A stretch of 64,000 nucleotides of DNA, taken from Trichoplax adhaerens (Eukaryota; Animalia; Placozoa). This document shows, piece after piece, positions 1 through 30,641 of this stretch (position 1 is the first letter of the stretch; each line of letters starts with the position of its first letter). The notes below the pieces were generated by a model. The model was given only the letters and a program-made list of their open reading frames with translations. It searched no databases and was not told the DNA's origin. Location of the stretch: NCBI RefSeq assembly GCF_000150275.1, contig NW_002060967.1, positions 186,001 through 250,000 of the forward strand. Direction: 5' to 3'. The translations under genes were made by a program, and so were the position numbers.

Positions 1-101
1 GTAATTTCTACTTTTCTATGACAATAGAAGACTGTTACGATATTTTAATTGATTTTATGGTGTAGCCAAGCCATGAAATGATTACCTCAATCATAATTTA
101 G

Positions 102-3100
102 CTAAACCAATAGTAGCTGTGTTTGTGAGTATAGTGCAAATGATACTGTAGAATCCAATGTTAGGGTTAGGGTTAGGGCCATATTAACAATTTTTATCAA
201 AGAGAGATTTTATAAACTTATCATTACATTGTTTGTATCCAGATAATACGTGTATACACCTTTTCATGTTTGGCTAGTCATTATAATGCATTGCTAATTC
301 TTTTATCTATCAGCACGAAAATTTAATTCTTGGTCAACTGCCCTGTTATATTGCAGCATTGGAACTTCTCATGTGGCCCATCAGAAGGCCAAAGTGTAAA
401 GTTTCGAAGCTGTAATATTTCAATGAATGGTATTTGCTGCGATTTATCATGCATTATTTTGTAAGGTAAATTATCAAGAGTCATTAATGAATATATTAAT
501 ATTAAAGATCTTCATTCATTTTTGATAGAAATATGAACGTTGAGATTGATAGTTTCGCTAAAACTCTCTTATCTTAATTAAGAGAAAAATTACAAACGTA
601 CCTATAGCATTTCAAGATTAATAAGAAAAAGTTGGATGGAATATTAGACAATTTTAACTCTAGAAAATAATTGAAAGCAACGCTTTGTTGTATAAATTTG
701 TTTCTATTCATTGCATCCTACATTGAATTGAATAAAAATTTCTTTTATCACTTCAGTTTAAGTAATCAACGTAAATAAAAGGTATGCAATGAAAAGTATG
801 CTTTTTGATTTTGTATTCTGTCTTTGAAAGTATATTAAGAAATGACAAAATTATTTCTTGTTTACTTTCCTATTCTATATAAATGTGTAATTCTAATTAC
901 TTCTTCGTTTTTCTATTTGGAGGGTGAGAAATAGTTTTATCGGCGTAAAAGTCCGAAATTGATCATTCTCGAAGAGTTACAGAATTGTGGGTGACATGTT
1001 TTCTTGGGATAAACTCAATTTTACTATGACAAGGCTTTGGGATGGGAGTTTGTTTTCTATGATTGCCAACACCTTTGTGTCATTAGTAGTTTTGAAGGTA
1101 TAAGCAAAGGAATTCATTTGTAAGTAGACTAGGGCGGAATGAGGCAAAAGACATTCTATTAAGCAGCATTCCTCTACGTGTATCTTAGTACTATGGCCAC
1201 TGTGTTGTACCGTCATCTTTTTAATGAATTACGGATTCAGGCTAATTAAAGAGGCGAATGATTTACGCAACCATAGCAGCAATCAGATTTGAAATCGATT
1301 ACGCGTATATCCTGTACGTATATTGAACGTATATGTTAATACCTTCGTTAGAAGTAGTTTTTTTCTCTTAGTGGACTAGTATTTCAATCATGGCATGATA
1401 TATTAATAGAGACAAAGTTTCGATTCTATTAGCAGAATTAAAACTGGGTAGATTTGCAATGAATGCGATAGCTCAGTTATTAAAGTTAGAAATTCTTCTA
1501 TTTTGACTGGAGTGAGATTTGTTTTTAGCAGTGGTCGACGCACCATGGCTCCGCACCGTTGCACTAAAGTTCACATCGCTAGTCAAAATGATGTACAGTA
1601 TAAAACACGGCAGCACTTGACGTCGTTGATTGTATTTCAAGTTAGTATAAGTTTTAATTATTATTACTCATGAATTGGGCAGTGATGTTCGCCGTTAATA
1701 AAATTACCCGTAAAAGATGTATTGATACTCCAAAATAAATGAGAACAAATACATGTCGAACATATTCTTTTCACAATGAAGGGGATTACCCCCTCCCATC
1801 AGCCCCTATATAAATCTAGAAAGAGGGACATTTTTAATATTCAAAGTAGCCCGTGCACTCATTGATTAACAATAATTGCTGTAGGTAGGTACTGTCTGAA
1901 ATCGATAAATAATTGGCAATATTGAAAAAATGGCGTGATGAAATAGCCTGCATGCAGTTTTGATGCACCGCAAGAGGGCAAATCATAAGTACATGTCACT
2001 AGTGGAATAGTATAGGTAAAAGAATGGTCACCGTCAAAATGATACCGGTGAAAAACACTTCAATTCCTAATCAGAGGTTTAATAATGAAGATTCATTTTT
2101 AAGTTACCTTTTAAGATTGGATAATTTAATCAGTATGGTCACTTTCAAAGTAATCGATTGAGTTGAACTACAGTTTATTGTACTGTGTATCTTAGTCTAC
2201 GTGTATTGTAAACCGGCTACTTTATTTGGGTTAAAACGGAACCTTATCCGATAGCATAATCTCGTTGAGAATTCTACATCGTAAGATTGTGTAGCGATAT
2301 ACGTGTATTTGGTTCGTGTTTTTATACCAGTCATTATAACCTAAATTCGTCTACAGTATGATAACGCGGCTACCCATTTTCCACCTTGCCGCAACATTGA
2401 CATTTCTCCTGGGAGACAAGACGTGACTATCAGAGGTTTGTCGATGCCACGAAACCGCTGAAAGCGATTCCGCGTCCATGAGGAACCTCTAGCCCAAAGC
2501 GCAATTTTCTATTTTTCACTGAATTATTATCACTGCTGTACTTGATCACGTCATTCAATGACTCAACGCACTATTTCAGAGCGCTGCACTGCCAATCCGT
2601 TTGCATCTTGTCGACTTCGACTGAACACTGAGCAGAGAGCAGGTGGTGAACTAGTGATGCTATAAATAAAAACAACGAAATGAACTATTTTTGCCTCCAA
2701 CTGATTCTATCGCTTTTCATCATACACCATAGGAAAGTGCATGTGCCATTTCAGCCCTTGCTGTAATTGCAACAACAGAGCTGGAAGTCAACGATTTACT
2801 ATTCAATGTGCCATTTCAGTCGTCGCTAACGTTGTAGTGGCATTGGATGCTAATAGCTATCCCATTAGTCGAAAGTGTCACTGGACTTGGACGCACCTTA
2901 CTACAGACTACGATTGGGCAAGAGATGACTGCACCAAGGTCAGGCCAACACGACTTGTGTTGGTATATTGAGTTGCACTTGTACCCTTGGACACTGTACA
3001 GTCCTGGAAGAAGTTGGTGGCTGCCATCGGGGAAGGTCGGGGAAGGGGGGTACTAACGAATACAAGGCAGGAGGATAAGCTTATTTATTCCTTGAGTAGC

Positions 3101-3336
3101 TGTTAGGCCATAGAAATAAATGAGATTTTTTTGACTCAATGGCTTAACAATAACTAAGCCCAGTCGATCTTCCTCTACCCTGTACTGTGCATGTCCATTT
3201 CACTTTTAAGTTTGGATTTCTGCTTTTCATCTTATTTTGCGCATGGAAATCGCAGTGTAGTTATGGGCTTGAGCGACTGGATACAGATCACTACAGTAGA
3301 AATGACCAGTTGAAACGGTCATTTCTCAAATTTTGA
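102..3336 (+). CDS. 5'-partial multi-exon Cys-rich protein resembling an IL-17 receptor ectodomain; no TM segment seen (putative soluble receptor-like protein)
   Basis: Phase-compatible GT-AG exons 1529-1640, 2357-2435, 2580-2642, 2733-2938, 3256-3336 (TGA) read SGRRTMAPHRCTKVHIASQNDVQYKTRQHLTSLIVFQ|YDNAATHFPPCRNIDISPGRQDVTIR|ERCTANPFASCRLRLNTEQRA|GKCMCHFSPCCNC...DDCTK|CSYGLERLDTDHYSRNDQLKRSFLKF*. Less certain upstream exons 102-124 (KPIVAVF) and 357-429 (HWNFSCGP...). IL-17R resemblance judged by eye only. Confidence 0.5.
160..178 (+). repeat. Interstitial telomere-type (TTAGGG)3
   Basis: gttagggttagggttaggg inside a putative intron. Confidence 0.7.
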
Positions 3337-3630
3337 ATACAGTACTGTACACTGTACAGTGCAGTGCTGTACAGTGCATACAGTACAGTACAGTACTATA
3401 CTGTACAGTCGCTACAGTGTACAGTGTACAGTACAGTACAGTGTACAATACTGTACAGTTCCGTAAAACGTCACTCTCCCAAATCTGAAGCCAAAAAAAT
3501 TCGCGAAACGAACAACCTACAGTACTCTGCACTGTACAGTACAGTACTGTACAGCGAGTAACACAATACAGTACTGTACACACTACTGTACAGTACACTG
3601 CTCAGTAGTGTGGACTACAGTACACTACAT
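3337..3630. repeat. TACAG/TACTG-rich low-complexity island (self-complementary TACTGTACAGTA units), promoter-proximal
   Basis: Dense tacagtactgtacactgtacag repeats about 320-610 bp upstream of the ATG at 3947; explains spurious ORFs 3326-3598 and 3364-3561. Confidence 0.8.
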
Positions 3631-3946
3631 ATCCTTTCCTTACCATCCGGACGGTACTGGAATGCACTGTGAACACGCAAAAAAACACAAACAAGACGAT
3701 ACACAACTTTGAAGTACTCTATGTATAATATGCAATCCTACACACTTGATAAACAGTCTTGATGACATTTTTCCAACACATGGCGTTGGTAACTGTTGTC
3801 CGCCTTCTTGATGTTATCACTTAAGAAGCTTCATCGAAATCGCTATAAAAAGATTATTTATGATCCTTTGGTCCATTTGATAACTGTATAAAAAGCTAAA
3901 GTGAATCTTGCCTGCAATTACCTACTAGTCGATCTCGGAAATCCTC

Positions 3947-6900
3947 ATGGAGATACGCTGGAGAAACTGTGTCCTTCTTTATTTTTGTCTAGTCATAGGC
4001 ATTGCCATGTCGGTGAGAAAGAATTTTTCCGACGAAGCACTATGGCGATCGGCTTGTGCTCGAGTTTGTAGAGAGGTAATGTGCTAAACTACTACCCAAT
4101 CTTTACATTCTATTATCGCCTAGCATTCGAAATTTCCATCTCCATGTTACAGCAATTTTTTTTCCATTTACTTTTACCTTCCATTAATTTCCTTGAAAGG
4201 AAATGTTTTACCACCACTAATTATATTTGGATGGAAAATGCCTTTGCATCATCTTTGAATTTCATATTGAGTCCCAAACTTACATCATCAATCCTTCCAT
4301 TGGAACATACATGATATAGCCTTATACTGAATGGATGGAAATGGAAATTGATGAATGTTGGATACATAGTTAGAAAACATTTACTCTTGATTAAGCCAAG
4401 TATTGACGGAGAAGAAGTTGTTGTACTGTTCAGCTATGCTAGTTTCACCTTATTGTGTACAGTACTTGTGTGTACTCTCTACTGTACTGTACATTGTGGT
4501 GTTGCCGTTTTTACTGCTGTGCGTACGGGGTACGGGTGCCGGTCAGCGTAGTGTCGGAAACCAGCGATCTTGCGTAGTACTGTACAGTAAAGAAAACAGG
4601 AATGTGCTGTCATAGTAGGGAGACTGCGGCACTTTACAAAATAAAAATTGGTTAGTGACTTCTGAGTGTTTTCATGTTTTACATATCGGCTAAAAGTCAT
4701 TTACCATAATTTTAAGAAATCCAATTTTGACCTGGCCTTTTTCTACGCAAAGGAAATAATTCTTGTAGACTCTCGGATAAAAGTGATAGCGATCCCTTGA
4801 ATAATGACTGTGTATTCAACGGAGAGGCACGTAAACTCTCGGACTGTCACTGTTACTAGAATAGTAGGCACGGCAGAACTTGAGAAGTACCGTCGTGTTT
4901 TTTTTGTGGATTAACTCATTAACATGATGTTACAGTTAAGTAATATTTAGTGTCGTCTGCTTTCTTTGGGCAAAAACAAGTTCTAATTACAAGTTAGTAA
5001 ATTGGTAGAGTACCTGTCTGTGTCTTGTATTGATAATTTGATATACATGTGCAATACAGTGCATTTTGAAAATTGGAGTTGCAATGCTCGGTATTCCCGT
5101 ATATGCCTCTGGATCATATTATTTTTTTTCCCTTCCATTTTTTTTTTGGTAGCGATGATGTCCTTTGTACGGTCTTTTAAAATGGGTTTTTCCGTGACGA
5201 GTTATATTTTTGCTCACTCATTTCTATCAAGGCAGACAGTAATACCCTATAACTAGCGTGATTATACCGTACCGTACAGTATGTCGCAACTATCTCCCAT
5301 GAAAAATTTTCAAACTTTGTACTTATGTATCCCGATAAAGAGTAACAAATTGATTGCTGCTATTCTACGGCCTTCGTCCTGTTTTGTCAATTGGGTTGCC
5401 GATCCGGGCGCACAGTATGCCGTCGTGCCGTCTATGTACAGTATCCACTATAGACTGAAAAAAAAGTATGTACATTACTGATTAACTACTCTAGACCGAC
5501 CCTGATTCTTTATTTGCCTTTTCAGTTTTGCCACACAATTTCGTGTAGCAAACTGCTGGTGTTGAACACCACTAAAGCCTATTATTGAATACTTATTTTA
5601 CTAATTGTATCTCCACCGCTTAATTATTGAAGCAAGATAATCCCAATGTTCTTGGCTTGTTTTAAATTTCGCTTAACATAGAGAAAGACGTCAGAATGTT
5701 TGACTTCATCATGTACGTCAATCCTATTCGACGGTCTCTATGCGTTTCGTGCACTAACGTTGGAAAAAATTTTTCTCTTTTTTTCTTTTTCGGATGGCAT
5801 TTTTTTTTTTTCACTGGACCAGTACCCTGGTTCACACACTGTCCAATTCTTACAGTACAGTACAAGAATTTGGGTCTACTGTACCGTAGGAAAATGATTG
5901 TAGCTATCCTAATACTGTACTGTTTTGTACAGTATTACCGTCAACGCTACAGTACGATACTGTACTGGTGCGTATTCTATGCCAATCGATTGCGGTTGAC
6001 CCCTTTTATTGATCAGAAGATATCTATATCTATACTGTATATACTGTATGTTGTATAGATATAGATATAGATATACTGTATATAGTATAAATAACTAACT
6101 AGATCTTAAACAATAATCTGCGATGCAAAATAAGAGATGGGTTGGGCTAGTGGAAACAGTACAATGCTGCATAATAGTGTCCTTTTGCCAGCCCTTTTCC
6201 GTGATTAGTGAAAGAATAGTGTACAAACTAGAATGACCTGAGACAATTACAACACGATTCTCTACTCTACACTACCGTATGATACAACGTACACTGGTAT
6301 CATGATTATCATGAATTATTTGTAAAAGGGAATCGTGTAAATGAGGACTTTGGCGATTTGAAAATTTCTAAAATGCGTGGATAGACTATTTTATTACTCT
6401 GTAGTACCATGCAGAATCAAATCAGATTGAACGTGAATGGTATAATTCTTAACCACATTTGATGCTTATATTGATTTTCTTCTTCAATCTTGTTTTATTA
6501 GGAAGAGGTTCTTGGCAATGAACCTTTATGTCTGTTGAATGATAGTGTATGTAGGCGTGCCTGCGAAATACCTTGCCACATGAAAAAATACGACGGTGTT
6601 CTAGACTGTGAGAAAACTTGCAGTGTCGAAATAAGCGCAAGAAATTGGACTGAATTTGAAGTATGCAAAAGTAACTGCAAGCTAGCAAGCAAATTCTTTT
6701 TTATTCCTTTAAGACCATGTAAGTTGCTTTATGGTATAAACAACGCTTGATTATTTACTATCGCAATTTTTTACAGCACTGATTGACAGTGCTGTGATAA
6801 TTGTCATTGAGTAAATCATTTATCGTAGAATTTTTTAAAACAATATAGCAAATGATTGAAATATGTTATTATATACATTCGCAAGTGCCAGCTATCGGTA

Positions 6901-9419
6901 ATACTCTTAATAATATACTGTATCTTGATATTGGTCATTTATAGACGTAGATTTTAAGAATCTATCGCTTCCCGAATTTGAAAAATATATTGGAAGTAAG
7001 AGGCATCGTATTAATAACAATAGCATTATTCAATTTTGGGTTCTTATTGGAGTAGTCAATTTTCATTGAATTGTTAACCTCGACATTGAATAAATGATGG
7101 ATTTTATTAATCTTAGCCGACCTATCTTGGCCGGATCTGCGATGCAATGATAAAGGCTTTGTTGTATCTCCACCTCCACAGCACGACGATCCATGTAAGT
7201 ACTGTAGAGATAGTCCCAATTTAGGGTGAATATCGTAATGCTGTATTCTTAAGAATGTATCAAAAGTATTTCATCATTAATAACTGGTGTCATCACTTGC
7301 TATGTTTCAAACCGCAAACGATCAAATATGTACTTGCCCTAGAGAACTACCATCCGATGTAATAACCGATGATTTCTTTTACGTACCTGATAACAAATCT
7401 TGCTTGACTGTTACCGAACATGAGCATCTGACTTTACAGTTGCGCTGGAATGGACGTAAGTTTCCTTAATACCCCATTAGTAGTCAGTAGATGAATTACA
7501 ACTCGCATAAAGTAGAGTGCATCCTTAATAAGTTGAAATCATCTAAGGTGATGAGATACTGCTTTTATATAGCTTCTCATAGAATGTACGAAGTTATCGT
7601 GACTGACGTGATCAACGAAAATAGTTCTCAGCCGTTATATCGATGTAAAGTAGTGAAAGAGCCGAAACTCGACTTAAATAATATCGATGAAATATTTCCA
7701 TTATCCCAAATACACAAGGGGTTAGCTGTTTCCATCATTGATGCTGAACCAAGGTATCTTTTGAAAGTGCCACAGTACGTTGTAAAAACAAATAGCAAGG
7801 CCGCCCTTTACGTCAACGGAAAACTTGGTTTAATTCCTCCCAAAGCTTCTACACCTTCCGTAGGAGTTATCGCTACAACAAGCACCTTAGCAAAAACAAC
7901 CGTTGAAGACACGAGCAAATCGACTACTGATTATGCAACGACAACAACGGCAAAGACTGCTAAATTGACAACATCACCACCGGGTATAGGCTTATTCTGT
8001 ATGATAGAATCATTTAAATAATCACGTTGCCGTTCTAAACCGAATTATACTCTTTTCAGGAACGTCCTTATCGGAAGTCACCTTAATAGTAGTCCTAGCT
8101 GTTGTTGTTACGGTAGGCGCAATAATTGGCGCCTATTTCATATATAAATGGCACAAGAAAAGATCACCAGTTTTGAAAAAAGAAGAGGAAATTACGAAAA
8201 TGCCTTCAAAGCTCGTGAAAGATGTCTTACCACCGCCAAATCTACCTGTGACAGGTATGATATTCTTTACTTTCAATAACTTGACACAACAATATACATA
8301 CAATGTAATGCGGTATCATTCATCCGGATTAGGCGAATGCCAAAACGAGAAATGTATTGAGCAATATAAGCTGTTGGAAAAAAGAGTTGATGAAATTTTA
8401 ATGGGATTGAAGAATGGTGAGTACGATTTTATCGTTGCAAATGATATTCTTCTTGATATCTCTTTTACGATAAGTAGCTAACGTTGACGTTGTCGTTACG
8501 TTTTATTATTTACATAGACCGTCCAGTTAATCTAACACCAACCACGGTTTACATAGCCACAGCCAACGTGTGCCCAACTGTCAAGACATTAATGCAGTCT
8601 TTACAAGCCCTTGAGTATGATTGTGCTCTTCCAGCAATGGAGAAAGACAAGGCTTTTGAAGTTGGTGATGGTCCTTGGACGTTTCAACGATTAGCCTCAG
8701 CAAGCAAGGTTCAATTACAGTTGACAGTCATAATTTCCTTATCTAAATTGTTGATATGAAAGTTCTATTGATTATTTATTGATAGTTGTTGCATTTCCCT
8801 CTTGTGTGCAATTCTACGCATATAGATTATTATGATTGTAAGCCAAGAGCTGCTCAAATGTATTAGTCTCTTCGAGAAAACATTAAGCGTTGGAGATTCT
8901 GGTGGTACCTTTTCGAATTCAGAACTTCGAATGATTTGTGAATGGAAATATGCACTCAGTTTGGAGTATGACTTTCCTACACAGAGTCGTCTTATTTTGG
9001 CTGCAGTAGACGATACTGATAGTGATACTATCAAGAGTATTCTCACTTTACAATCCAAGTCTGTGCTAAGATTGCCCGCTGATCGATGCAAAATCTTGGC
9101 GGCTGTGACCGGTTTATCGGAATCAGATTGTCGCGTTAACATTACTGTACAGAAGACTATGCCGGAGAAAAAGTCCGATCAACCTGATGATCGATTTGAA
9201 ATACCGCTATCGGATGAACTATTAAGGGAATTGTCATCCTGTGAAGACAGTTATGCATCTGATGATGATAGCGATATATCAGATAATGACACTTTAAGTA
9301 TCATTATTAATGAGAATCGCCTTCCACCCCTATTTGTTCCGGATGTAAGTATACCAATAGAAGATATCGGACGTACAAAGACCCAAACTGAAATGATCGA
9401 TCCATACGCTTATGCCTAG
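3947..9419 (+). CDS. Type I membrane receptor: signal peptide, Cys-rich (anosmin-like) box, FN3-like domain, Thr-rich stalk, TM, SEFIR/TIR-like domain, acidic tail (IL-17R/Sef-like)
   Basis: Exons 3947-4075, 6405-6439, 6555-6718, 6945-6995, 7117-7198, 7343-7455, 7573-7983, 8060-8254, 8333-8416, 8518-8708, 8826-9419 are all GT-AG and phase-consistent. Signal MEIRWRNCVLLYFCLVIGIAMS; TM VTLIVVLAVVVTVGAIIGAYFIY-KWHKKR; cytoplasmic TVYIATAN...VKTLMQSLQALEYDC...GDGPWTFQRLASASK|IIMIVS fits the SEFIR box pattern. Confidence 0.8.
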
Positions 9420-9477
9420 CGAATGCATAAATTTTTCGTTTTAATTTACTGTAAGTCATATTACTATGTAACATTTA

Positions 9478-9509
<32 letters not shown>

Positions 9510-9599
9510 AGTATTGGATTAGAGATATAACTTATCGCTATAATTGCAGTTTTGATTAAATTTGATGCGCTTGTTACTAAAGCAAGATTTGGTTACGCC

Positions 9600-11750: not shown

Positions 11751-11835
11751 GGAGAACGTGATCTAATTCTTGCTGACGTGATCAAGAAAGGAAAGCAAAA
11801 CAATCTCCAGATTGATACGATCGATGGATTAAAAA

Positions 11836-12325
11836 ATGGCTGCTTTAACAACATTAATTCAAATATGGCTAACATTGCTCTCCATTGGTATCCTTGGCCA
11901 ATCGGACTGTCGGCAGTTGTCACTGCTAGCGAACATGACTGTAGTGGAGAAAATTGCTTTTGAATCGTTAGGCCGACAAATGTGTATTGGCAAGGTAAGG
12001 GCGATCGATAGGAGGTTTTGTCTTGAAATAGTAAACAGTAGACGGTATCAATGTTGACGATAGTTTAATCATCTTCTAGAATACATGTAGACCCAATGAC
12101 ACTATTCATAATCATTACAGTCGACTCCAATTGCGCTGTAAAAGAGAGTGCAAAATCAATTCTTTTCCAACCTATCAAATTACTTTTCAATTGATTTTAT
12201 TACTTGTAATATTACTATCGACTTTAGCGATGGTAATTCGTCGCTATAAAACACAAAAATCTGCGAGTGTCAAAAATTTCACGACCACGTTTTCCCTAAC
12301 CCTAACCTCTACACGAAGTGGCTGA
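11836..12325 (+). CDS. Possible small single-pass membrane protein (~134 aa, 2 exons); alternatively part of the adjacent GPCR relic
   Basis: Exon 11836-11994 (MAALTTLIQIWLTLLSIGILGQSDC...MCIGK|gtaagg) joins in phase to 12080-12325 (NTCRPNDT...CKRECK...FQLILLLVILLSTLAMVI-RRYK...SG*). Confidence 0.4.
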
Positions 12326-15300
12326 TCTTGGAACAGGGAAATCTTTCCCTTCAGAACTTACATTCCTAAAAAATGAGATAATGCAACACACAGGTAAGGT
12401 ATCCGATCAAATTTAGATTCGAAAATAAAAAGGGGAGATGATCCTAGACATTCCCCACTATGCTATATTGTATCATCGACTGTCTGATTAAAAAAGCCAG
12501 CCAATTTGGGATATACTGTAGGCCTTACAGTATGCAATATTGACTGAAGCTGTTCGTCTATCTTTTTTGCGGCCTACTGCATGTCATCGTGGTAAATTGA
12601 AGTAACTGATGATTTCTTAACAACTTGTGAAAGGCAAATTTAGTCATCCTGTTGTACTGTAGAAGTGTATTTGCCCAACAGTCTTTGTGTAGTCAACTTC
12701 CACTACGGGATCAAAAATGAATTGTTGTCACTTGTGATGATGATGACAATTAATTTACAGCTCCATCGAGACGCATATCAATGTGCATCTAAACTACGAC
12801 TACATTTGATGATCGTGATGGTAAAGGAATAGTATGAACGATCATGTTGTTACTAGAGATCTAGTATAACAGTACGACTCGCCGATTATTTTATTAGTAA
12901 TTGATAATCTGAATATTGAAACTAATCATTTCAACGCGAAATGGCTCAGTATCGCCTTCTCCATTTGTTGATTACTAGTCTTGCTTCAGATCACACGTGT
13001 AAGATGCATGCCTATGATGACAAGCTTGAACGCAACGCTGTACTCACTGCTATCATTTTGGAATTATTTAAAACTATTCTTGATGATGGATTGATAAAGC
13101 ATCAGATAGCCTAAATTGCATGATCATCAAGATAGATCAGCAGTAGATACGCACTCCCCATTGAATTGTACGGCGTCAATTAGTCAAGAAAGCAGTGTCT
13201 AAATACAGTGGTTGGACTCCTCGCTTTTAGTAACTTGTTTTAAAGTCGTTATTTGCAATACTGTATTGTAATTCATGCTCGTTTTTCTTTGTTCAATTCT
13301 CACTCAATATTGGATAGTCCACTCCTACCATCATTTTACAGTGGAAGTTGTAGGACTATTCCGTGAGGTTAGTAATAACCTTGACTATATGGATCCTTTG
13401 CATCGAATCAATAAAATATGATTCATAAGTTGGGAGAAATGGATTTCATTTGAATATCCGGTTTCACAGCCCGCCATGACGCCAAGGCTTGTCATTGCTG
13501 ACTGGTCTCGTAGTCTTTTCCAAGCATTACATTCTCTAACTTTGTCGCTAAATGCAAGTACGTCCATTATTTCTTCGATAGTGTCATCTACTGTTGTATA
13601 ATATTCAAATGCACTGGTAGTTTTCTGAGATATGGATGTACTACTGATAGAGAATGGCTTTATAACATGGACCTATGTTGAATTGCAGTCGTTTAGGATT
13701 CAATCATCATAATTCAGTCATTACCATAATAAAGTGCCGTTATTCATGGGTACATCAGGCATGGGAATCATGATGAAGTGATGACTCATCCTTTCGACAT
13801 AACTATCGTCCATCTTTAGTAGACCCTGCTTCAGTGAATATCAACAAACATGCTCTAAATTCCAGTATATGCGTATATATTACGTGCACATATTATCCCC
13901 CCAAAATAGTAAATTACGCTTTCTCATCAATGAACTAGGACGTAGCATTATAGCTGACTATATAACTTGGTATAATAGACTGAAACAATTGAAGAGAGAG
14001 GTTTCCCAATCCTAAAATTCGCTCAATAAAGATCACCTTTGCTCTTCCTTAAATTAATATTTCTGTCTTGAAGGCTTATGTCAAGTTAGAAGAACCGAAA
14101 TGCTACGTCGAAACCCGCAAATAATTATATATATATATAATTAATTAAAAAAAAAGCGTTGCGAGAACAATGACGTCCATTATTAATCGACTTTCAATCA
14201 CGCTTTTAATTTTTTAGTACCGCACTTGATTCCAAGAAGAATAAGCATGCTGTATTATTGCTATTGTTGCCCTTGTAACAGTGGATCCACCACCGATTTC
14301 TATGTCAATAGACGAGCAGGGCAGGATCTCTAATAATATTTCATATCCTATCTTAGATGTACTTTTATTTTTGTTTACAACTCAAATTGAAGGAAAAATT
14401 GTTTACTTTAGTCAACATTCTTGGATAGTCATCGTTGATCCTTTATATCAATTCGTATCCTATTGTACAGCTTGTCAACTTTTAGACAAACAACAGCACA
14501 AAGAAACATGGAGGTTATTCAACAACCACAAGGCATACAGTAAATTGTATAGTCTAGTATCAATTATTCAGTTATTGACGGAATCTGCTACGTTCCGTTT
14601 TCTATTTTTATACAATGATGTTCAAGTAGATGCAATCCGAACATTTTTTTCGGTCAAACATGCACACTAGTTGAATACTGTTCCAGTACATTATGGAAGC
14701 AAAGATAGCTTGTAGCAGTTAATTACACGATAATTAGAATTAAACGTATACCGACTATTCGATGGACAATAGTATACTGACCTCGACTGCCTATAGAAAG
14801 GATAACTTTCAGCCACTTCCCTAAATGACGTCAATGATTATTTTATTCTGCTAAACTGAGAAGGATAAACTCCAAGTTATACTTGAATAACGTCTACTGT
14901 AGGGATTAATTAATTAATATAATGTACTTATTGACTCAATCATCACTGCCTACCATCCGTTATCAATGATTGATACTTAGAATGCATTTTGTAGCTCGTC
15001 ACTAGCTATCCATTCTGAGTGGAGTGGAAGGGAAAATAATAATTTGAAATCCCATTTTTGATGAACTGGAGAATGAAGTAAATTATGGAAGAAGAACTTT
15101 CATAATAACTTGATTAATACAATGAGAGAATTACTTATCATGCTATGTAAACTACTTTATTCATCAATGATACTCAAGCTTAAACTAAAAGCTTACGCTG
15201 TACTAAACCCGCAACTTTTAAAATTTCCCTTACTCAACAAACTGTAAAATGGCCAACGTTACTAATCTGATGAAATCAACTATTCGGTTTGGTCGTCACT

Positions 15301-15923
15301 TCACTGGTATACCCCAGAAGATTAATTAAACCAAATTTTACAGATATACAGTAGAAATACTCCTAAAGTTTAATAATAGACTTACACTCTGTTAAAGAAC
15401 GTTTACAATTGACTATACGTCTCTTCACTCAGACGGACAACTTGTAAGTAATCAAAGACTATAAATTAGTAAAATATCTCAAAATCTTCCTTCAGTGATC
15501 TTTACTGAGATCTGACATACGCTATACGTGGTCAATTCCTTTCCTTTTACCCTCCCATGCTTGCTATCTATTCCTGTACTAATAAATTAATATAGGATTT
15601 ATAGAGATAAATCTGGTACCGTCATGCAAATGTAAATTACTTGTAGATTACTAGTCATCAAAGTGTGGATGGACTAAAACTGGATAACAGTATGTGACGA
15701 CCTGCACTTATTCAGATAGTCAAAACAAAAATTATTGGAGTTTTAAATATAGGCCCGTTATTTCAAAATTTTCCCCTTGAAATTGAATTGAATTTTTTAG
15801 AACAGCTTCAATATTATTATCGCTATATCCATAATCTTTAACAAGATCATGAATAGTTACTATGCTAGTATCAATAACTTGTAATATATCACATAATTCG
15901 TATTATCCTATTTTCTCTTCTAG

Positions 15924-18900
15924 TATATCGATTATCAGTATTTTAACGCAAGATGTATTCAAAACGATCCATCACCTGGCCTATATCAAAAATGTCGAGA
16001 AGGTTGTCTTATACCTATACTCAATATTAACTTTTGGAACACGAAATATCAATGCAGAAGTTTATGCTTTGCTAGAGCAAAGGATTTTACTCTAGCGACG
16101 TGCATGCTAGCTTGCAATTCCTTAGATGTAATGCGAGACCATCTAAGTGACTACTTGAGTAAGTACAGTAAATTAATCACCTAAATGTTGCACTTGTATA
16201 CTATGTCTCAAGGCAGATTCTATTTAACACTGGAAAAACCTTTGCTAATGCCGATATTGTCCTTTTTTCCTTCTAGAATTGCGCTTTAAGCCGTACTTAC
16301 TACCTGAGATTGCTACTAAATACAACAGATCCCTAGCATCAATCAACTTTGAACATCTTCCAATTAAGAAACCTGCTCCACATGATAAAGGGCCTACTCT
16401 CCTACCCGCAACAGAATTGAAGGCGAAAGAAGAGATTATGAAACGCATTGTAGATCCTGATTCATCCATTACCATTCCAAAAATGTGCATTAATCAAGCG
16501 CAAATTAATTTAGCCAAGCAAGTGCAAGGTAACCAGTTTTTAAACATAAAAAGGATCTTAAAGTTTGCTATCGCAATTGATACTAACTCTTTGTAAAATG
16601 ATGTAGCTTTTATAACGCCTGCGACCGTTTGCTACTGTTATGATCAAAGTATGTCAACAAGCGATAGAGCCCCAATACCTTCCATTCCATTTACTAAAAC
16701 AGTTACTATTACTGAAAGCAAAAGACTATTACTGCGCTTAGATTGGACAAGGTCGTCCTATGAAGGTTCACTCCATCATTCGAAATTAATTTAATTTTAA
16801 AAGTATAACATATAGTTAGTCTCAACATTGCATTTTTTCTCTTTTATTTAATACTAATTAGCACCAAAGGATTATTTTGGTTACACATTAACGTGGGGAT
16901 TTCAGGGAGGCGATGATAATTGCAAAATTTTAAAACGGACAACCACAGCATTTACAATTGTATTTGATAAAGAAGTGCCGTCATTGTGCCCTCCGATCCA
17001 TGTTACAATTACAACCTACCCAGCAAAACCAAGATCATATATTAGTGAAAATGTCTATTTCAATCGAGATATAATGAAACATCTCCCTAATTGCCATGCT
17101 ATAATAAAGGAAGTACCTACATCTAACAACATGGTTATCAAGACAGCAGGTACCACCCACTATCCTGGATTTACAAATGGTAATTGATTCTATAAATAAT
17201 AATTTTATAACATGCTAAGTTGTAGGTAGTTCTGTTCAATGATTTATTAAACTGCGACGATACATCGTCCGGCGGTGACTGAAATACACAATAAAATTGA
17301 GCTTTCACTACAAACTATCAACACTATTAAAGTAGTTATATTAAAAATGACAGTAACTAGTTTTAAGGCATAATTTTACTACCGTACATTAGGGTAATAC
17401 TCGTTTTGCAAATATTTACGAGCATCATTGATTACCAAGCAAAAACACCGTTGATCTTTTGATAATACTATTTCGATAACATCCACCTAGCAACGATGAA
17501 CAGAAAATTAATAGTATTCAGTTTTTCATAGTTTCATAATTATTACGCTAGAGATAGTGATCTAAAGTATTCAGTGGTAAGTAATAGTATGAACATCATC
17601 AAACCCAATTAACGGCATTACAGTCATTGTACCTTTTTAATGCGATTTCGTTAACATTAATATCTATGCAAATCTAACAATTTCCACTGATGTGTAGATA
17701 GCTGCAATTGAGTTTTAAATTATACGCCATGATACGACCGATTAATGGTATTTTTTAATACGACTGATATGCTTAGCAACACAATCAAATTTCATTTCCA
17801 CCAAGCCCGCTACCATAGCAACAATAGGTAAAAACGAAATATCGTTGATTTTAAAACTTGATCTCTTTATAACAATTAGTTATGTTTCAGCTGAGCAACA
17901 TAATCTACTTGAATGTAATCGCATAAATGTAACAATGATATTTTACTTTCGCAATTCTCTATAATCTTAGCAGCTATGATAGATTCTTGTATCAAATTCA
18001 TAAAATTTTGTTTCTAATAGACTAATCCATACTTTCAAAGTAAATATGATTATTTTGTATAAATTTTTTTTGTAAAATCTATGTATTTTTGTGATTATTT
18101 ACTCTGGGTTGAAATTATTACATTAATTCCTAGTACTTCAATATAAACCTATTGGTACAATCCTACAACCAGTATAATTTGTTGCAAGATTACGTAAAAT
18201 TGTTTAATACTACAGTGTTTTAATGGTATGCTACTTAGTCATAATTACTCAGCATTTGAATTTTTCAATTTATACAATTAAAATTATTCACTACCAACAC
18301 TCTAAGGTGATACAACGGGTCAAATGCAACATATAAATCTTGTACTCCTTTCAGCCATGCTATCCATATTAGCAGTCATGATGATAATTGGTTTTGTATG
18401 GTACAAACGATGGTTGAAAAATAGAACAGTATCTCGTAAGGGCTACTATCGTAAGTTAATTGGCTCATTTGAGCGTAATTATTTTTTTAATATTTTATGA
18501 TTTATTACTTACTGTATGCGTAACTACTAAAATGTAATATTTCATAATAACATTGATAATTTTGAATCAGATAATGACAAGCCACCTTCCAATTCTCATC
18601 TGAATCAATCTTCAAAGTGTTCTACTCCGGGTTAGAAAGCGTTACATTTATATACTTTGAATCTAGAGTACTGTATTTTCTCGTTAAGCTTAAATCGACT
18701 CTGCTAGTTCCGTCTACCATTTGTTGGCATAAGTAATACGATGACTAAATACGAATAAAAGTTATCGCAAACTAATACATTGTTTTCATGACACAGTATT
18801 GTTAACTTATTACCGTATGTGTATGAGCTAATCAGCTATCTTTCATATTTATATTAGGTGATTGCTTAAGTCAACCTAAAGAATTAATAGGGAACCCTTT

Positions 18901-20766
18901 AAGCAACGAACTCGAAATCACTGAAAACCAAATTATTCACCAAGATCTACAATTAGAAAGTACTACTGTAACAAGTATGAACTGGAAATTTAGTACTAAT
19001 TATATGAATGATGAAAAACAATTCTTGACCTCATTCGTTAAATCGTATTAAAATAAAATATTAAATAAAATTTTAAGTAATACTTATTCACCATGTTATT
19101 TCAACATATTTATAGATCTGGATAAATCGTCGTCCATAAATCACTCGTCAAGGGACTTATCGGTGACGTCTAATAATCCTGTATCTAACTCTGAGAGAGC
19201 TAGAAATGTTACAGATGAATCGATCAGTGTAGATAAAGTAAATATTAGGCCTGGTGAGAAATAATTTATTATCCTTAAGATAATTTAAACCATTCAAAAT
19301 TAAGCACCTTTCGTTTAAATGATGAATTAATTATATGACTCTTTTATCTAAAAGGTACTGACGTATCTTATCAAATTACTAATTTGTTAACTGATCATAC
19401 TTTAGCAACAACTATCTCTTCACTCGATTCTTGCAAGCAAAAAGAATTCCATGATCCATTAATAGTAGGAAGTTCGTCCTGGATGAAACAAATTCTAGGT
19501 AATGACTATAGTAATTATTCCATAGAGATCATGTCGGCATATTAAAATCCGTAGTCATGAAGTTGTATCGATACATTGTAATTTATAGAAAAAATTGATA
19601 ATTACAGGACTCCATTGCTGTTATTTTGTTTTCGTTATATAAATTGATCTATATTTACTATTTTAAAATAGATACTGAAGATCAGGATACCTTCAGCGAT
19701 TACAGCCACGATTCACTCTATGATAGACTTAAATCGCATATTGATCTTGATAGTTCATCAGATGTTAACAGTCTGAATGCAGGATTCGAGAAATTAGATG
19801 CTGAAGATCAGGATAGTTTCAGTGATTACAGCCAAGAACCGCTCTTCTATAATAAACTTAAATCGCATATTGATCTTGATGGTTCATCAGATTTTAATAG
19901 TCTGAATACAGGATTAGATGGTATTATCAATTAGCTATTCAAATTCTATTAATCTGCTAAATATTGGATGTATCATCTAGTTTACCGTTAACTGATGCTT
20001 CTAATATCACAATTTTCTTGTAGAAAATTCTGATACTAGTGCTTATGGCACAAGACCTCCTAGTCAGAAACCTGATTATCATCCGTCGATATACATATCG
20101 TATTTTCCCGATAGAGAAGGTCATTCTCAGGAAGCTAAAGCTCTAACCAACCGTCTACGTCACCTTGGGTTTAATGCAATTTCACACGAATACAATACTT
20201 TAGCCATTAACTATCAAGGTCAAGGAAACTGGGTTGCATCTAGCATTAGAAATGCAGATAAGGTATGTACAATTTAGTAATGCCAACGCAATCGTAAAAT
20301 GTAGATTATGTATGTACAATTTATGACTTTATTCCAATTTTAGGTGATAATGATTTTATCCCCTGAATATTGCGAAATTAGTAACTGGTTGTTAACTAAA
20401 GACAAATCCGTTGGGAACTATTACACGAACAAATCTCTAATTGATTTTTTACGTGTTACTCAAGAATTAACGGAAATTAGAAACATTATCTGCAGTAATG
20501 CCCAAAAAAACACTAAAACCTTTTTGGTAAGGCTAAAAACAAGTCAACAATTAAACGCATTGGATGGCTTTAATACATTCCCTCTGCTGGATTGGCCTAA
20601 AGATGAAAACAAACTTGTATGTTTTTTACATAATGTTGAATATTATTTACCCAAACCATTACCGAAAACAACAAAAGTTATAATCGAAGCAGACGGCGAA
20701 GTTATAACGTCTGTTGTTAGTGAAAAACAATCAGATGAAGTTACGGTCATCACTACTACATGTTGA
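15924..20766 (+). CDS. IL-17 receptor-like type I membrane protein with FN3-like ectodomain and C-terminal SEFIR domain; 5' exons (probably 14.1-15.9 kb) unresolved
   Basis: Approximate exons 15924-16002, 16096-16159, 16277-16528, 16607-16765, 16862-17179, 17778-17827, 18355-18450 (TM ...IAMLSILAVMMIIGFVWY-KRW), 18571-18629, 18858-18974, 19116-19253, 19354-19498, 19672-19920, 20024-20262, 20344-20766. SEFIR: PSIYISYFPDREGHSQEAKALTNRLRHLGFNAISHEY...GQGNWVASSIRNADK|VIMILSPEY. Confidence 0.85.
19672..19920 (+). repeat. Coding tandem duplication (2 x ~126 bp) within a cytoplasmic exon
   Basis: DTEDQDTFSDYSHDSLYDRLKSHIDLDSSSDVNSLNAG / DAEDQDSFSDYSQEPLFYNKLKSHIDLDGSSDFNSLNTG. Confidence 0.9.
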
Positions 20767-27000: not shown

Positions 27001-27325
27001 ACTTATTTGATGAATTTTAGCTGGTATTTAGTAAGCCAATGCTAGGTCACAAACGCTGAGAAGCTACTGCAATATTTATTTGTGCTAATTACTTTCCGTT
27101 TCATCTATATTGCTGAGATCTACTCCATTCATTTAAGCTACAATTTATACGCTATAATATAGAACTTTATAATATAGAAATTATTAATACAAGACAATAA
27201 ATACGTTGCTGCGAATGATAGCTTATTCTATTAAAACTATCGAATTAACTAATAACTTTACCTCATCTTACAGATAAGTATGGTTAAAATTTGCACAAGA
27301 ATGAACTTTTCATTATCTATTTTAG

Positions 27326-30300
27326 GTCAATTCCCCTTCACTTTGGTTTGCCAATTCTATTTTATCGACTTATAAGCGACAACTTCAAGCTGGACTAGTT
27401 CATCGGCTGCATGGTCAGTTACTTACAGTTATTTGTCCATGATCTTAATATAGACTAGACCTCTCAGTTATTAAACTATTTTTTTAAACTATTGAATGTA
27501 AATCTTTTTCATTAGACAGCAATGCTGCTACCAGAGTATGTCCAGTTTTATCGACCAGTAACGATAAAAGGGGAACATTACTTAATAGGAATCGTTTACG
27601 ATTTCGAGGAAGGCCTAAAATAACTAAAATAAAGGACAATATCGTTTTATACCTGCAATGGAAATCATTACCTATCCAGGGTAAGCGCTTAAATTGATAG
27701 TATTATCAATGTAATCAAAAATTTTCCGTTTACTATTTGACTATCAATGCTAACAAGACAGTCGTATCAAAATATTATTTATATTTATACACATATACAT
27801 ACATTGACTATCATCAAACTACCAGAAATAATCACTAGTAGAAGACGTAATTTGCGGAGCCCTGATTCTATATTGAACTATTCATACTAAAGAGAATATC
27901 ATCTTAGAATGCACACTTATTATACACGTAATCATATCAAAATCTTTCAGTGACCATATGCTTTTTTATACGTTGAAATATTTGTCCTCAAACTATCAAT
28001 ACAAATAGGCAACGTAAGTCATGTAGGCATAACCCAATTTTAGAAATATTCTCACTTATAACAATCCAAAATTAGTTTACAATCATTTTGGTAAAGCGAA
28101 ATGTAGAGCATTTATGATTTATTTTACATATGCAAAAATATTTATTACCAAAGCATCAATATATTTTAAATAGATAATGTAATTCATGCAAATATTATCC
28201 AGTTTGAGATTATTCTCACTTTATAGTGAGAAGTATTTCCTTCCATTATATCGATCTATCTTATGATATCTAGAAATAAGATTTAGTAGATAAATTCTAA
28301 TAGTAATTTTAGATAAACTTGTTCTACCTCTAAACAGACCTCTAATTTCATAGACTTGGTTACTTATATAAATTATTTCGTTGCTTGGGCGCCAGTCAGC
28401 CATGGTCATTTCATGTATTGGAAGGAATACTGTATCGAAGTATCTAAATATAAGACTTCTATCAATATTTCTCTTCAGCTGGATCAAAGACAACTATCTA
28501 CTTCGTGTCCATTATTATATGTTACCCTTATCGCCAATTCTATTAATCATCAAGGCTACATTATATATGATCTAGTTAAATTAGATAAAAGTATTCGCAA
28601 GTTAGCCCATTGCTCAAGATATCCTCGGTTCATACGAACTGCATCCAAGAGTAGTAAAGACGGTAGTATGGCACCTGAGAAAGCTCTAACCAATCCACCT
28701 ACCCCCTCTTACAAACCATCAGGTTATTTCTATAAGTAGAGTTGTTTGTCTGACCGATATTTATTATCTTATTACGGCACTAAAGGAAAATATTATAGCT
28801 TCCTAAAGTTATGCATTAATGTTAAGGTTTTGAAATAGAATACACATTAAATACAGTACTGTATCATCCTGTAAAAGCAATCAATCTTATACCAAGTACC
28901 ATTTTGCTAGTAGTACCTTATATCAGAATAAACTGCAACACATCAGTTTGAGTGATTATAAAGCCTTTTTACAGCATCTGACATTATGCAATTACAGAAA
29001 TATCTGCCTTTCAAATCTAATACGAAATGTAAGAAAAAAATATGATATTTGAACAGTGGATAGTGTTAATATTTTTGAGTAAAAATTAGTTTCGTAGTAC
29101 TGCAATACAATCTATTTTTATCACATATCTATATCAGATTATACTTAATAGTAATCATCATCTAATTATCATTAGCTTATTAAAAATCCATTTCTTAAGG
29201 TAAAAAGCAAAACGGTAGATTTGTTTAATTTCATATTAACATCTTCAAATCATGACTCTTTCACAGGAAACATGCCATTCTTAGCTACTGCTATGTTGGC
29301 GGTATTTCTATCATTATTTAGCATATGTATAACTGTATGTATGGCTGCATTTTGCTGGTGTGAAAAATATCGTCAGCAAACAAAGAGGACTCATAGTAAG
29401 ACTGGATTCAAATTTAAAATTGAGCTTGACGTTTTATTTTTCTATAAAATCTTAATATAAATAATATGGAAATGTTATAAGTATAATATTTATATATAAT
29501 ATTTATTACTAAAATGGTACCATATAATTGAATCCTAACTGTATATATGTAATATATATATATATATATTATTGAATGATTGCATGGATTTCAGCTTTCT
29601 TTCCGCTGATCAATTAATATATTGCATATGCAAGTTTTAACTATTACTATTGAATTACATGATAATTAGTAATTTAGCATATATATAAAACAGCTAAAGG
29701 GTGAGATTCCGAGTAGCTATTTCGTATGTTTAAACGTCAATTGTTCCAGCTGCAATAGTGAAGTATAGTACAAAATTAAAATGATCTATTTATAGCATTT
29801 TATAATCCTTCTTATGCAGTAACATTGCCTCCTATTCAAAGTCAAGTTACTGCTACATTGCCATCTATAAGTCAACAAGGTAAGAGGACAGCTTTTTATT
29901 TATCTCAATACCTACTAAATTTATGAATTTGATGGAAATGATCTGATAATGTTATAATTTATCGTTGCATCAAGAAGATTAATAAGATGTCATAATCAGA
30001 AAATGCAATAAATGTGGTATTACATTTGATGACTTTGTAGTCTGAATTGATGCTAGAAATATCCAAACTCTCACTTAATTACTTATTTTCAAACATATGT
30101 ATAAATACATAGCTTGATATGTCTCTTTGATAGAAAATCCAGTCTTATTGTAGCTAATGTTATTAGGTTGCAATATTAACTTGCCATATATTCGTTGCTT
30201 GCATTAAGGCACTCCAATCTATCATATTCTTTATTCAGACCTCAATTTATCAAACGATAGCTACGAGCACAATAATTACTATAATAAATGAATCTGCTAT

Positions 30301-30641
30301 CACCAATTCCTCTATTATATTGATAAATCACTTACCTATTGCAATATTATCATCAACTAATGCTACAGGTCTAGAAAAATATACCACTATCTCCAATTTA
30401 CAGAAGACAAATGCCAACCCCACAGGAACTGCTATACCTTTACAAGAAAATCCTCATTATATCAGTAAGGATGCTACTTATTTCTCCTTATGTAATGTCT
30501 CATCCCTTATAACTACTGTATATACTGTGATCTAAGCTAATATAACCTACTGATTATGATTTTGTAAATGCAAATGATATGTTTGCAGAATATGACATCA
30601 CCTCAATTAATCTGGAACTACCAACCCAAAATAAACTGTAG
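27326..30641 (+). CDS. Type I membrane protein paralogous to the SEFIR receptors' FN3-like ectodomain, short cytoplasmic tail with NPxY, no SEFIR; 5' end unresolved
   Basis: Approximate exons 27326-27413, 27516-27680 (...IVLYLQWKSLPIQ), 28354-28722 (DLVTYINYFVAW...EYC...TSCPLLYVTL), 29267-29395 (TM FLATAMLAVFLSLFSICITVCMAAFCWC), 29820-29879, 30369-30464 (EKYTTI...ENPHYI), 30589-30641 (KYDITSINLELPTQNKL*); phase-1 junctions. Confidence 0.75.

What the first reader, a model, noticed from the sequence alone, without database searches (positions are those of the whole stretch)
102..30641. Tandem cluster of IL-17R/SEFIR-type receptors that looks like a signalling, inhibitory and decoy receptor set
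Seen: four co-oriented genes. Three share a homologous FN3-like module split by a phase-1 intron a few residues after the conserved W (LTLQLRWNG| / LLLRLDWTRSSYE| / IVLYLQWKSLPIQ|). Two end in SEFIR-like domains with the same phase-0 intron (ASK|II, ADK|VI), one has a SEFIR-less NPxY tail, and the upstream gene appears to lack a TM segment. Established: IL-17 receptors signal as heteromers via SEFIR-Act1, and soluble or decoy forms exist. Inference: a locally expanded cytokine/immune receptor system in an early-branching animal, possibly with heteromeric pairing and built-in antagonists.
Basis: partly seen in the sequence, partly recalled or inferred. Interest (0 to 1): 0.85.

Follow-up and report, generated by a model that had tools for sequence, protein, structure and literature searches.

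The report
Tandem SEFIR receptor genes in Trichoplax
Three neighbouring genes of the very simple animal Trichoplax encode related single-pass membrane receptors. Two carry an IL-17-receptor-type (SEFIR) signalling domain and one has lost it, but I found no fourth soluble member, no recognisable IL-17-receptor outer domain and no IL-17-like ligand.

Summary
The window is Trichoplax adhaerens DNA.

- **Gene C (11836-20766).** Spliced RNA contigs from three studies confirm it: 14 exons, 878 codons, with signal peptide, Cys-rich exon, TM segment and SEFIR.
- **Gene B (3947-9419).** This is TRIADDRAFT_61640. Its SEFIR match is below threshold (16.8-18.7 bits, cut-off 23), but it is in the right register and has the same phase-0 intron. 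In this assembly, B's W-containing exon has no productive AG acceptor. Trichoplax sp. H2 has 4 extra bases there that create one.
- **Gene D (about 27326-30641).** D lacks SEFIR. A D-type gene in another placozoan-like contig runs on into SEFIR exons. Here a TAG replaces its AAG 16 bases before a donor site that is still conserved. D is therefore either a truncated receptor or a pseudogene.
- **"Gene A" (102-3336).** Not supported.

The ectodomains resemble each other only weakly. Shuffle tests combined over the ectodomain and SEFIR exon pairs give p 2e-4 for B-C; over the ectodomain pairs alone, 0.03 for C-D. They match no FN3 or IL-17R model, and both AlphaFold models failed. No IL-17 ligand was found. 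A Death+SEFIR adaptor lies on another contig. One SEFIR transmembrane protein and this adaptor were already published (Kamm 2019). The signalling/inhibitory/decoy scheme remains speculation.

The parts
102..3336 (+).
   Evidence: No Pfam match in any ORF. No similarity to B, C or D exons. No gene is called upstream of B in the H2 locus L003. About 2006-2290 has four other copies in the genome at 68-71% identity. No Rfam family matches.
3947..9419 (+). Gene B = TRIADDRAFT_61640 (P0001), orthologue of TrispH2_008064 (P0006). Exons: 3947-4075 (signal peptide), 6502-6718 (Cys-rich), 6945-6995, 7117-7193, [7323-7455], 7573-7983, 8060-8254 (TM), 8333-8416, 8518-8708, 8826-9419.
   Evidence: Database models and their names. 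tblastn map of P0006 onto the window. Splice sites read from the sequence.
7323..7455 (+). B's W-containing exon (ends ...LQLRWNG, phase 1). It has no productive AG acceptor in this assembly.
   Evidence: Every upstream AG gives a stop or the wrong phase. H2 has 4 extra bases before 7320 that form TAG|AT. P0001 skips this exon and P0006 includes it.
8518..9419 (+). B's cytoplasmic SEFIR-like domain followed by an acidic tail. First half 8518-8708, phase-0 intron, second half from 8826.
   Evidence: Pfam SEFIR 16.8-18.7 bits, E 0.002-0.009, below the cut-off of 23. hhalign against placozoan SEFIR first halves gives E 0.019 in the expected register. In the second half only the first strand aligns, E 0.041. 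UniRef names the protein 'SEFIR domain-containing'.
11836..20766 (+). Gene C, 14 exons, 878 codons: 11836-11994 (signal peptide), 15924-16158 (Cys-rich), 16277-16528, 16607-16765 (W exon), 16862-17179, 17777-17827, 18307-18450 (TM), 18571-18630, 18858-18974, 19116-19253, 19406-19498, 19672-19920, 20024-20262, 20344-20766.
   Evidence: RNA joints in X5, X7 and X9, absent from the DNA-like run X1. GT..AG at every junction. Open frame with intron phases 0,1...,1,0. The H2 annotation has an 895-aa gene starting at the same ATG.
20024..20766 (+). C's SEFIR domain, split by a phase-0 intron (20263-20343)
   Evidence: Pfam SEFIR 23.3 bits on exon 13 alone, and 23 bits in the six-frame genome search. 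Orthologous exons score 47.8-48.6 bits. A profile of C-type and adaptor first halves hits solved SEFIR structures: 5y8f at E 3e-5 and an IL-17RB/RA construct at E 0.028.
19665..19915 (+). 129-bp tandem duplication inside C's exon 12 (two acidic, Ser-rich 43-residue repeats in the cytoplasmic linker)
   Evidence: Tandem Repeats Finder: period 129, 2.0 copies, 85% matches. Exon translation.
27326..30641 (+). Gene D, my model without RNA support; the 5' end was not found. Exons: 27326-27413, 27516-27680 (W exon), 28354-28722, 29267-29395 (TM), 29820-29879, 30369-30464 (NPHY), 30589-30641 (stop).
   Evidence: Phase-1 compatible GT/AG sites read from the sequence. The TM, NPHY and last exons are 50-70% identical to L006. 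C and D third-module exons: shuffle p 0.008.
30589..30659 (+). D's last exon: TAG at 30639-30641, AATAAA at 30630-30635, and a conserved but now post-stop donor CAG|GT at 30657/30658
   Evidence: A 69-nt alignment with L006:1066-1134. L006 has AAG at the TAG position and splices on, in frame, into SEFIR exons. No SEFIR remnant elsewhere in the window or the genome.

Best explanation
The window carries a tandem array of three co-oriented, distantly paralogous genes for single-pass type I membrane proteins of Trichoplax adhaerens.

Gene C is an expressed, correctly spliced receptor. It has a signal peptide, a Cys-rich N-terminal exon, a beta-rich module, a TM helix, a long acidic linker and a true SEFIR domain.

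Gene B has the same layout and the same intron-phase pattern, but a divergent SEFIR-like domain. In this assembly the exon holding its conserved Trp cannot be spliced in productively.

Gene D belongs to a receptor type that has TM + NPxY + SEFIR in another placozoan-like genome. In T. adhaerens it ends at a premature TAG and its SEFIR exons are gone.

Inferred, not shown: an unknown ligand brings receptor chains together. Their SEFIR domains then recruit, by SEFIR-SEFIR contact, the Death+SEFIR adaptor encoded on contig C1414, which feeds a MyD88/TRAF-like pathway. If D is expressed, it could bind ligand or partner chains without signalling. The ectodomains are orphan and cannot be shown to be IL-17R-type. 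There is no fourth, soluble gene.
For: Organism and gene B identity: P0001 is TRIADDRAFT_61640 and P0006 is TrispH2_008064. Gene C structure and expression. C's SEFIR. B's SEFIR-like domain. The same phase-0 intron splits the SEFIR in B, C, L004 and L006. Paralogy: Fisher-combined shuffle p 2e-4 for B-C and 0.03 for C-D, with all non-corresponding exon pairs at p>0.3. B and C share the intron-phase pattern 0,1...,1,0. D truncation. Adaptor: Death 34.6 bits and SEFIR 31.2 bits, as reported by Kamm 2019 (PMC6321704). No further paralogues were found elsewhere in the genome.
Against: B's SEFIR is below the Pfam cut-off. It is not found by my small placozoan SEFIR profile, and phmmer finds nothing for it in the PDB. 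Its second half is not recognisably SEFIR. The exon pairs for the similarity tests were chosen after the fact, and B-D is not significant. D has no RNA, annotation or database support, and no signal-peptide or Cys-rich exon was found for it. Both AlphaFold models were unusable, with pLDDT 38.8 and 34.1. Nothing tested shows ligand binding, pairing or adaptor recruitment.
Confidence: 0.65

Rival explanations
1. One reading: a four-gene IL-17R-type system with FN3 ectodomains and a division of labour. B and C would be heteromeric signalling chains, D an inhibitory NPxY receptor and A a soluble decoy.
For: Two SEFIR-type receptors lie side by side. There is a SEFIR-less relative. Weak FN3/Ig leads exist: language-model neighbours of C's exon 5 score 0.82-0.85, and Atlas structural neighbours reach TM<0.4. 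By eye, D's third exon has an FN3-like F-strand pattern.
Against: Gene A is unsupported. No IL17R_fnIII or fn3 match was found, even on the joined database protein P0006. No IL-17 ligand was found (PMC4517768). The NPxY motif coexists with SEFIR in the D-type relative L006, so it is ancestral and not a substitute. The leads are within the range that shuffled sequences reach.
Confidence: 0.1
2. A partly decaying cluster in which only C is a working receptor. D is a pseudogene (nonsense codon plus lost SEFIR exons). B in T. adhaerens is crippled because the acceptor indel forces skipping of the Trp-containing exon.
For: TAG replaces AAG, and the donor 16 nt downstream is still conserved, which suggests a recent lesion. 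No 5' exons were found for D, and there are no database hits. B's exon has no productive acceptor, and the T. adhaerens model skips it.
Against: All seven modelled D exons keep open frames and canonical sites, while the SEFIR exons have vanished without trace. That pattern suggests the truncated form has been retained for a long time. An AATAAA sits just before the stop. Skipping B's exon keeps the reading frame. H2 keeps the exon.
Confidence: 0.3
3. B, C and D are unrelated membrane-protein genes that happen to be neighbours. The shared motifs and phase-1 introns are chance plus the general phase-1 bias of extracellular exons.
For: tblastn finds no pair at E<0.01. Several exon pairs are not significant. 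Phase 1-1 exons are common in metazoan ectodomains (my own knowledge).
Against: Four of six B-C positional exon pairs rank at p<0.05 or close to it, while nine control pairs do not. The SEFIR intron position is identical in all. The D-type gene in L006 carries a SEFIR that is 48% identical to C's.
Confidence: 0.1

Closest known systems
Placozoan 'SP + TM + SEFIR' protein and the Death+SEFIR MyD88/CIKS-like adaptor of Trichoplax sp. H2 (Kamm et al. 2019, PMC6321704)
   Same: Same genus and same architecture. The authors also found no FN3 or Ig domain in the ectodomain, and found similarity to IL-17R only in the SEFIR region. The adaptor is the gene I verified on C1414.
   Different: They report one such receptor, with its locus tag only in a figure. 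Here there are two adjacent ones (B and C) and a third, SEFIR-less relative (D). The tandem arrangement, the exon-level paralogy, D's truncation and B's acceptor indel do not appear in the passages of that paper that I read (main-text matches for SEFIR, IL-17 and CIKS, and part 1 of 2 of supplementary file 1). Its figure was not readable, and I did not read the rest of the paper.
Vertebrate IL-17 receptors IL-17RA to RE and IL-17RD/SEF
   Same: Type I single-pass proteins with a cytoplasmic SEFIR. A profile of C-type and adaptor SEFIR first halves hits an IL-17RB/RA SEFIR construct (E 0.028) and a solved SEFIR protein (E 3e-5). B shares the G-P-W and A-x-K-I-I stretch by eye.
   Different: No match to the two IL-17R FN3-like ectodomain models. 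There is an N-terminal Cys-rich exon instead. No IL-17 ligand gene was found. The only SEFIR adaptor found in the genome has a Death domain. Act1 instead carries a U-box and helix-loop-helix (my own knowledge), and I did not search for an Act1-type adaptor as such.
Truncated or soluble receptor antagonists (soluble IL-17R isoforms, MyD88s-type dominant negatives; my own knowledge)
   Same: D keeps the ectodomain and TM segment but lacks the signalling domain. That is the classical make-up of a dominant-negative chain.
   Different: D arose through a nonsense codon and loss of exons in a separate gene, not through alternative splicing. Neither expression nor function has been shown, and it may simply be a pseudogene.

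Membership tests
SEFIR domain (Pfam PF08357): gene C | Score at or above the curated gathering cut-off (23 bits) | tested here: met
   23.3 bits on exon 13 alone, which is the first half of the domain, and 23 bits in the genome scan. Orthologous exons score 47.8-48.6 bits. The joined domain was not searched (exon-by-exon rule).
SEFIR domain (Pfam PF08357): gene C | Sequence relation to proteins with a solved SEFIR structure | tested here: met
   Profile A8 (C, two orthologous fragments and the adaptor) hits 5y8f/5y8e 'Sefir domain protein' at E 3.4e-5 and the IL-17RB/RA construct 9ot1_B at E 0.028.
SEFIR domain (Pfam PF08357): gene B | Score at or above the curated gathering cut-off (23 bits) | tested here: not met
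   13 bits on the exon alone. 16.8-18.7 bits on the joined database proteins P0001 and P0006. SEFIR is still the best-scoring family, and the undoubted SEFIR exon of L006 scores only 17-17.9 bits.
SEFIR domain (Pfam PF08357): gene B | SEFIR/TIR-like alpha/beta fold | tested here: inconclusive
   AlphaFold2 model with pLDDT 38.8. Its strand-helix order is compatible but the model is unusable, so no fold search was run. hhalign against placozoan SEFIR: E 0.019 for the first half. In the second half only the first strand aligns.
IL-17 receptor family | Two FN3-like ectodomain modules (IL17R_fnIII_D1 PF16556, IL17R_fnIII_D2 PF16578, or fn3) | tested here: not met
   No match exon by exon, on the joined P0006 ectodomain or in the whole genome. 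AlphaFold2 of the ectodomain gave pLDDT 34. There are only weak FN3/Ig leads. Absence of a match does not exclude a diverged FN3 fold.
IL-17 receptor family | Type I topology: signal peptide, one TM helix, cytoplasmic SEFIR | tested here: met
   C: a hydrophobic N-terminus in exon 1, one hydrophobic stretch followed by basic residues in exon 7, and SEFIR in exons 13-14. B, through P0006: the same order. This was read from the sequence; no predictor was run.
IL-17 receptor family | Cognate IL-17 cystine-knot ligand encoded in the genome | tested here: not met
   PF06083 gives no six-frame match at E<=1 (low sensitivity, and the controls did not ring). Huang et al. 2015 also found none in T. adhaerens (PMC4517768).
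IL-17 receptor family | Signalling through an Act1/CIKS-type SEFIR adaptor | not testable with these tools
   A SEFIR adaptor exists but has a Death domain. Binding was not tested.
   No similarity, no Pfam match, no annotation in H2, and part of the region is a dispersed repeat.
NPxY-motif receptor tail (gene D) | A conserved cytoplasmic NPxY | tested here: met
   The QENPHYI stretch is identical in D and in L006. Whether it binds PTB-domain proteins cannot be tested here.

The most novel reading that the evidence does not exclude
Placozoans have their own small family of SEFIR receptors with a non-IL-17R ectodomain (a Cys-rich box plus a beta-rich module) and an unknown, non-IL-17 ligand. 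Within it, the Trichoplax lineage has turned one member (D) into a signalling-dead, NPxY-bearing chain through a nonsense codon and loss of the SEFIR exons. That would be a natural case of a dominant-negative or decoy receptor arising inside a tandem cluster, with the intact ancestor-like form still present in another placozoan.
Probability: 0.25. Interest if true: 0.65.

Novelty: new member of a known kind. Interest (0 to 1): 0.45.

Why it matters
SEFIR signalling is usually discussed as part of the bilaterian IL-17 axis. Placozoans have SEFIR receptors and a Death+SEFIR adaptor but no detectable IL-17, so these genes bear on what SEFIR receptors sensed before IL-17 existed. This report gives an RNA-validated gene model for C. 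It shows that the receptors form a local paralogous cluster. It also identifies two natural lesions, D's truncation and B's acceptor indel between T. adhaerens and H2, which can be compared across placozoan lineages. It also removes an over-reading: there is no evidence for a soluble decoy gene or for IL-17R-type ectodomains.

Tried and rejected
- **Joined exons.** The only joined sequences I used are the database proteins P0001 and P0006.
- **Retrieving C's full-length protein.** A two-row alignment of P0006 and C's exon 13 used as the query returned only the B proteins. MAFFT alignments of P0006 with several exon fragments were garbage and were not used.
- **Representative search.** The search with SEFIR first halves gave only B, two exon-sized fragments and two low-complexity hits.
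- **PDB searches.** phmmer of B's SEFIR region and of C's two SEFIR exons against PDB sequences found nothing relevant.
- **AlphaFold2.** B's SEFIR region (5-row alignment) gave pLDDT 38.8. B's ectodomain (single sequence) gave pLDDT 34.1. I ran no fold search, because models this poor give meaningless matches.
- **ESM Atlas.** Its own model of P0006 is poor (pLDDT 0.44) and its neighbours reach TM<0.4. Feature hits for C's exon 5 score 0.82-0.85 to fn3 and Ig-like clusters, a range that shuffled sequences reach a third of the time.
- **D's largest exon against 5.8 billion proteins.** No hit. This says little.
- **SEFIR remnants downstream of D.** A local profile over all six frames of the window found none. 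The same profile also misses B.
Full report
**Identity of the window.** The genome has 105.6 Mb in 1414 contigs, and the window is C1390:186001-250000. A database protein that matches the window's exons letter for letter is TRIADDRAFT_61640 of Trichoplax adhaerens (P0001). A 92%-identical protein, TrispH2_008064 (P0006), comes from Trichoplax sp. H2. The H2 locus L003 aligns to window 1-19391 at 98.5-99.4% identity. The "early-branching animal" is therefore a placozoan.

**Gene C (11836-20766) is confirmed by RNA.** I laid contigs of four runs on 15000-20999.
- Run X1 covers the stretch without any joint, so it behaves like DNA.
- Runs X5, X7 and X9, from three different studies, carry 12 joints.
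- All joints are GT..AG once the stated cut shifts are applied.
- The contigs' loose 5' end maps to 11963-11992. This puts exon 1 at 11836-11994, an ATG followed by a hydrophobic signal-peptide-like stretch.
- The H2 annotation starts its 895-residue gene at the same place.
- The 14 exons are in frame for 878 codons, with intron phases 0, then 1 eleven times, then 0.
- Exon 7 holds the only TM-like stretch. Exon 12 is a 129-bp tandem duplication.

**C's SEFIR domain.** Exon 13 alone reaches the Pfam SEFIR cut-off, 23.3 bits against 23. Orthologous exons from other contigs score 47.8-48.6 bits. A profile of these first halves together with the adaptor's hits a solved SEFIR protein (E 3e-5) and an IL-17RB/RA SEFIR construct (E 0.028). 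The second-half exon has no Pfam match of its own.

**Gene B (3947-9419).**
- P0006 shows a signal peptide, a Cys-rich exon, two short exons, the W-containing exon, a long exon with a Thr-rich stalk, a TM exon, a short exon and a two-exon cytoplasmic domain.
- All internal introns are phase 1, except the first intron and the one inside the cytoplasmic domain, which are phase 0. This is the same pattern as in C.
- SEFIR is the best Pfam family for B but stays below the cut-off: 16.8-18.7 bits, E 0.002-0.009.
- For calibration, the undoubted SEFIR exon of L006 scores only 17-17.9 bits.
- hhalign of B against the placozoan SEFIR first halves gives E 0.019 in the expected register. In the second half only the first strand aligns.
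- My small local profile does not find B, and phmmer finds nothing in the PDB.
- The intron that splits the domain (ASK|II) sits at the same place and phase as in C, L004 and L006.
- I rate B as SEFIR-like with a probability of about 0.8.

**An unexpected defect in B.** In this assembly the exon that ends ...LQLRWNG (7323-7455) has no AG acceptor that gives an open, in-phase reading after the upstream exon. H2 has four extra bases just before 7320 that create TAG|AT, and its model includes the exon. The T. adhaerens model skips the exon, which keeps the frame. Whether T. adhaerens really skips it needs RNA.

**Gene D (about 27326-30641).**
- From the sequence I can chain seven phase-1-compatible exons: a short exon, the W exon (...LQWKSLPIQ|), a long exon, a TM exon, a 60-nt exon, an exon with NPHY, and a last exon ending at TAG 30639-30641.
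- I found no signal-peptide or Cys-rich exon upstream, and D's largest exon has no database hit.
- The decisive comparison came from two metagenome contigs, L006 and L007, reached through a SEFIR fragment.
- These contigs carry D-type TM, QENPHYI and last exons, 50-70% identical to D's (TM exon E 4e-10). Those exons are followed, in frame, by two SEFIR exons with the usual phase-0 intron.
- D's last exon aligns with L006 over 69 nt, up to a shared CAG|GT donor at 30657/30658.
- T. adhaerens has TAG where L006 has AAG, and an AATAAA lies just before it.
- No SEFIR remnant exists downstream, elsewhere in the window or elsewhere in the genome.
- The NPxY motif is therefore ancestral to this receptor type and not a substitute for SEFIR. 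D is a truncated derivative, and whether it is functional or decaying is open.

**"Gene A" (102-3336).** The region has no Pfam match and no similarity to the other genes. H2 calls no gene there. About 2006-2290 is a dispersed repeat, and no Rfam family matches. I reject it.

**Are the ectodomains homologous, and are they FN3?**
- tblastn within the window finds no pair at E<0.01.
- Smith-Waterman scores against 5000 shuffles give p 0.0014 (B/C W exons), 0.03 (B/C Cys exons), 0.02 (B/C SEFIR first halves) and 0.008 (C/D third-module exons). The other pairs are not significant. Nine non-corresponding control pairs all have p>0.3.
- Fisher combination gives 2e-4 for B-C, 0.03 for C-D and 0.19 for B-D.
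- These exon pairs were chosen after the fact, so I treat this as moderate support only.
- No fn3 or IL17R_fnIII model matches, either exon by exon or on the joined P0006.
- AlphaFold2 of the ectodomain failed, with pLDDT 34.
- The Atlas leads point to FN3/Ig-like folds but lie within the noise.
- By eye, the W, the alternating aromatic strand that opens the next exon, and D's P-x-x-Y-V-x-L-x-A-N stretch look FN3-like. That is a lead, not a test.

**Pathway context.**
- The genome's only other detectable SEFIR lies on C1414, in a gene with a Death domain (34.6 bits) and a single-exon SEFIR (31.2 bits).
- This is the MyD88/CIKS-like adaptor of Kamm et al. 2019, who also reported one SP+TM+SEFIR protein with an unassignable ectodomain.
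- No IL-17 ligand model matches the genome, in line with Huang et al. 2015.

**Verdict.** The finding is a real local cluster of SEFIR-type receptor genes with new detail: the tandem paralogy, an RNA-validated model of C, D's truncation relative to an intact relative, and B's acceptor indel. The IL-17R label, the soluble decoy and the functional triad are not supported.

Noticed in passing
window 160-180: Three tandem TTAGGG units, a short interstitial telomere-like repeat.
   Followed up: no
window about 2006-2290: A dispersed repeat with at least four other copies in the genome at 68-71% identity.
   Followed up: partly
window 3354-3459, similar stretches at 4400-6000, and L002:2100-3200: GTACAG-rich 34-bp tandem repeat. 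It produces long spurious ORFs rich in Y, S, T, V, Q and C on both strands. The same kind of repeat lies next to the Death+SEFIR adaptor gene on another contig.
   Followed up: no
window 24631-25081: 170-bp tandem repeat (2.6 copies) in the 6.5-kb spacer between genes C and D.
   Followed up: no
window 15000-15443 joined to 15924: One RNA contig of run X5 joins 15443 to C's exon 2 (GT..AG). It suggests an alternative 5' exon or an unspliced precursor inside C's 3.9-kb first intron.
   Followed up: no
window 17484-17631: A low-depth joint with CT..AC ends in run X7, which reads as GT..AG on the minus strand. It hints at an antisense spliced transcript inside C's intron 5.
   Followed up: no
window 7316-7322 against L003 about 13344-13352: A 4-base indel between T. 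adhaerens and Trichoplax sp. H2, exactly at the acceptor of gene B's Trp-containing exon. Only H2 has a usable AG.
   Followed up: partly
window 12080-12322: An ORF with a TM-like stretch inside C's first intron. It has no Pfam support, and no RNA was laid here.
   Followed up: no
B (P0006 residues about 670-680) and C exon 9 (window 18860-18973): Both cytoplasmic regions contain a P-x-E-x-I-G stretch. It resembles, but does not fit, the TRAF6-binding consensus (my own knowledge). It may be chance.
   Followed up: no
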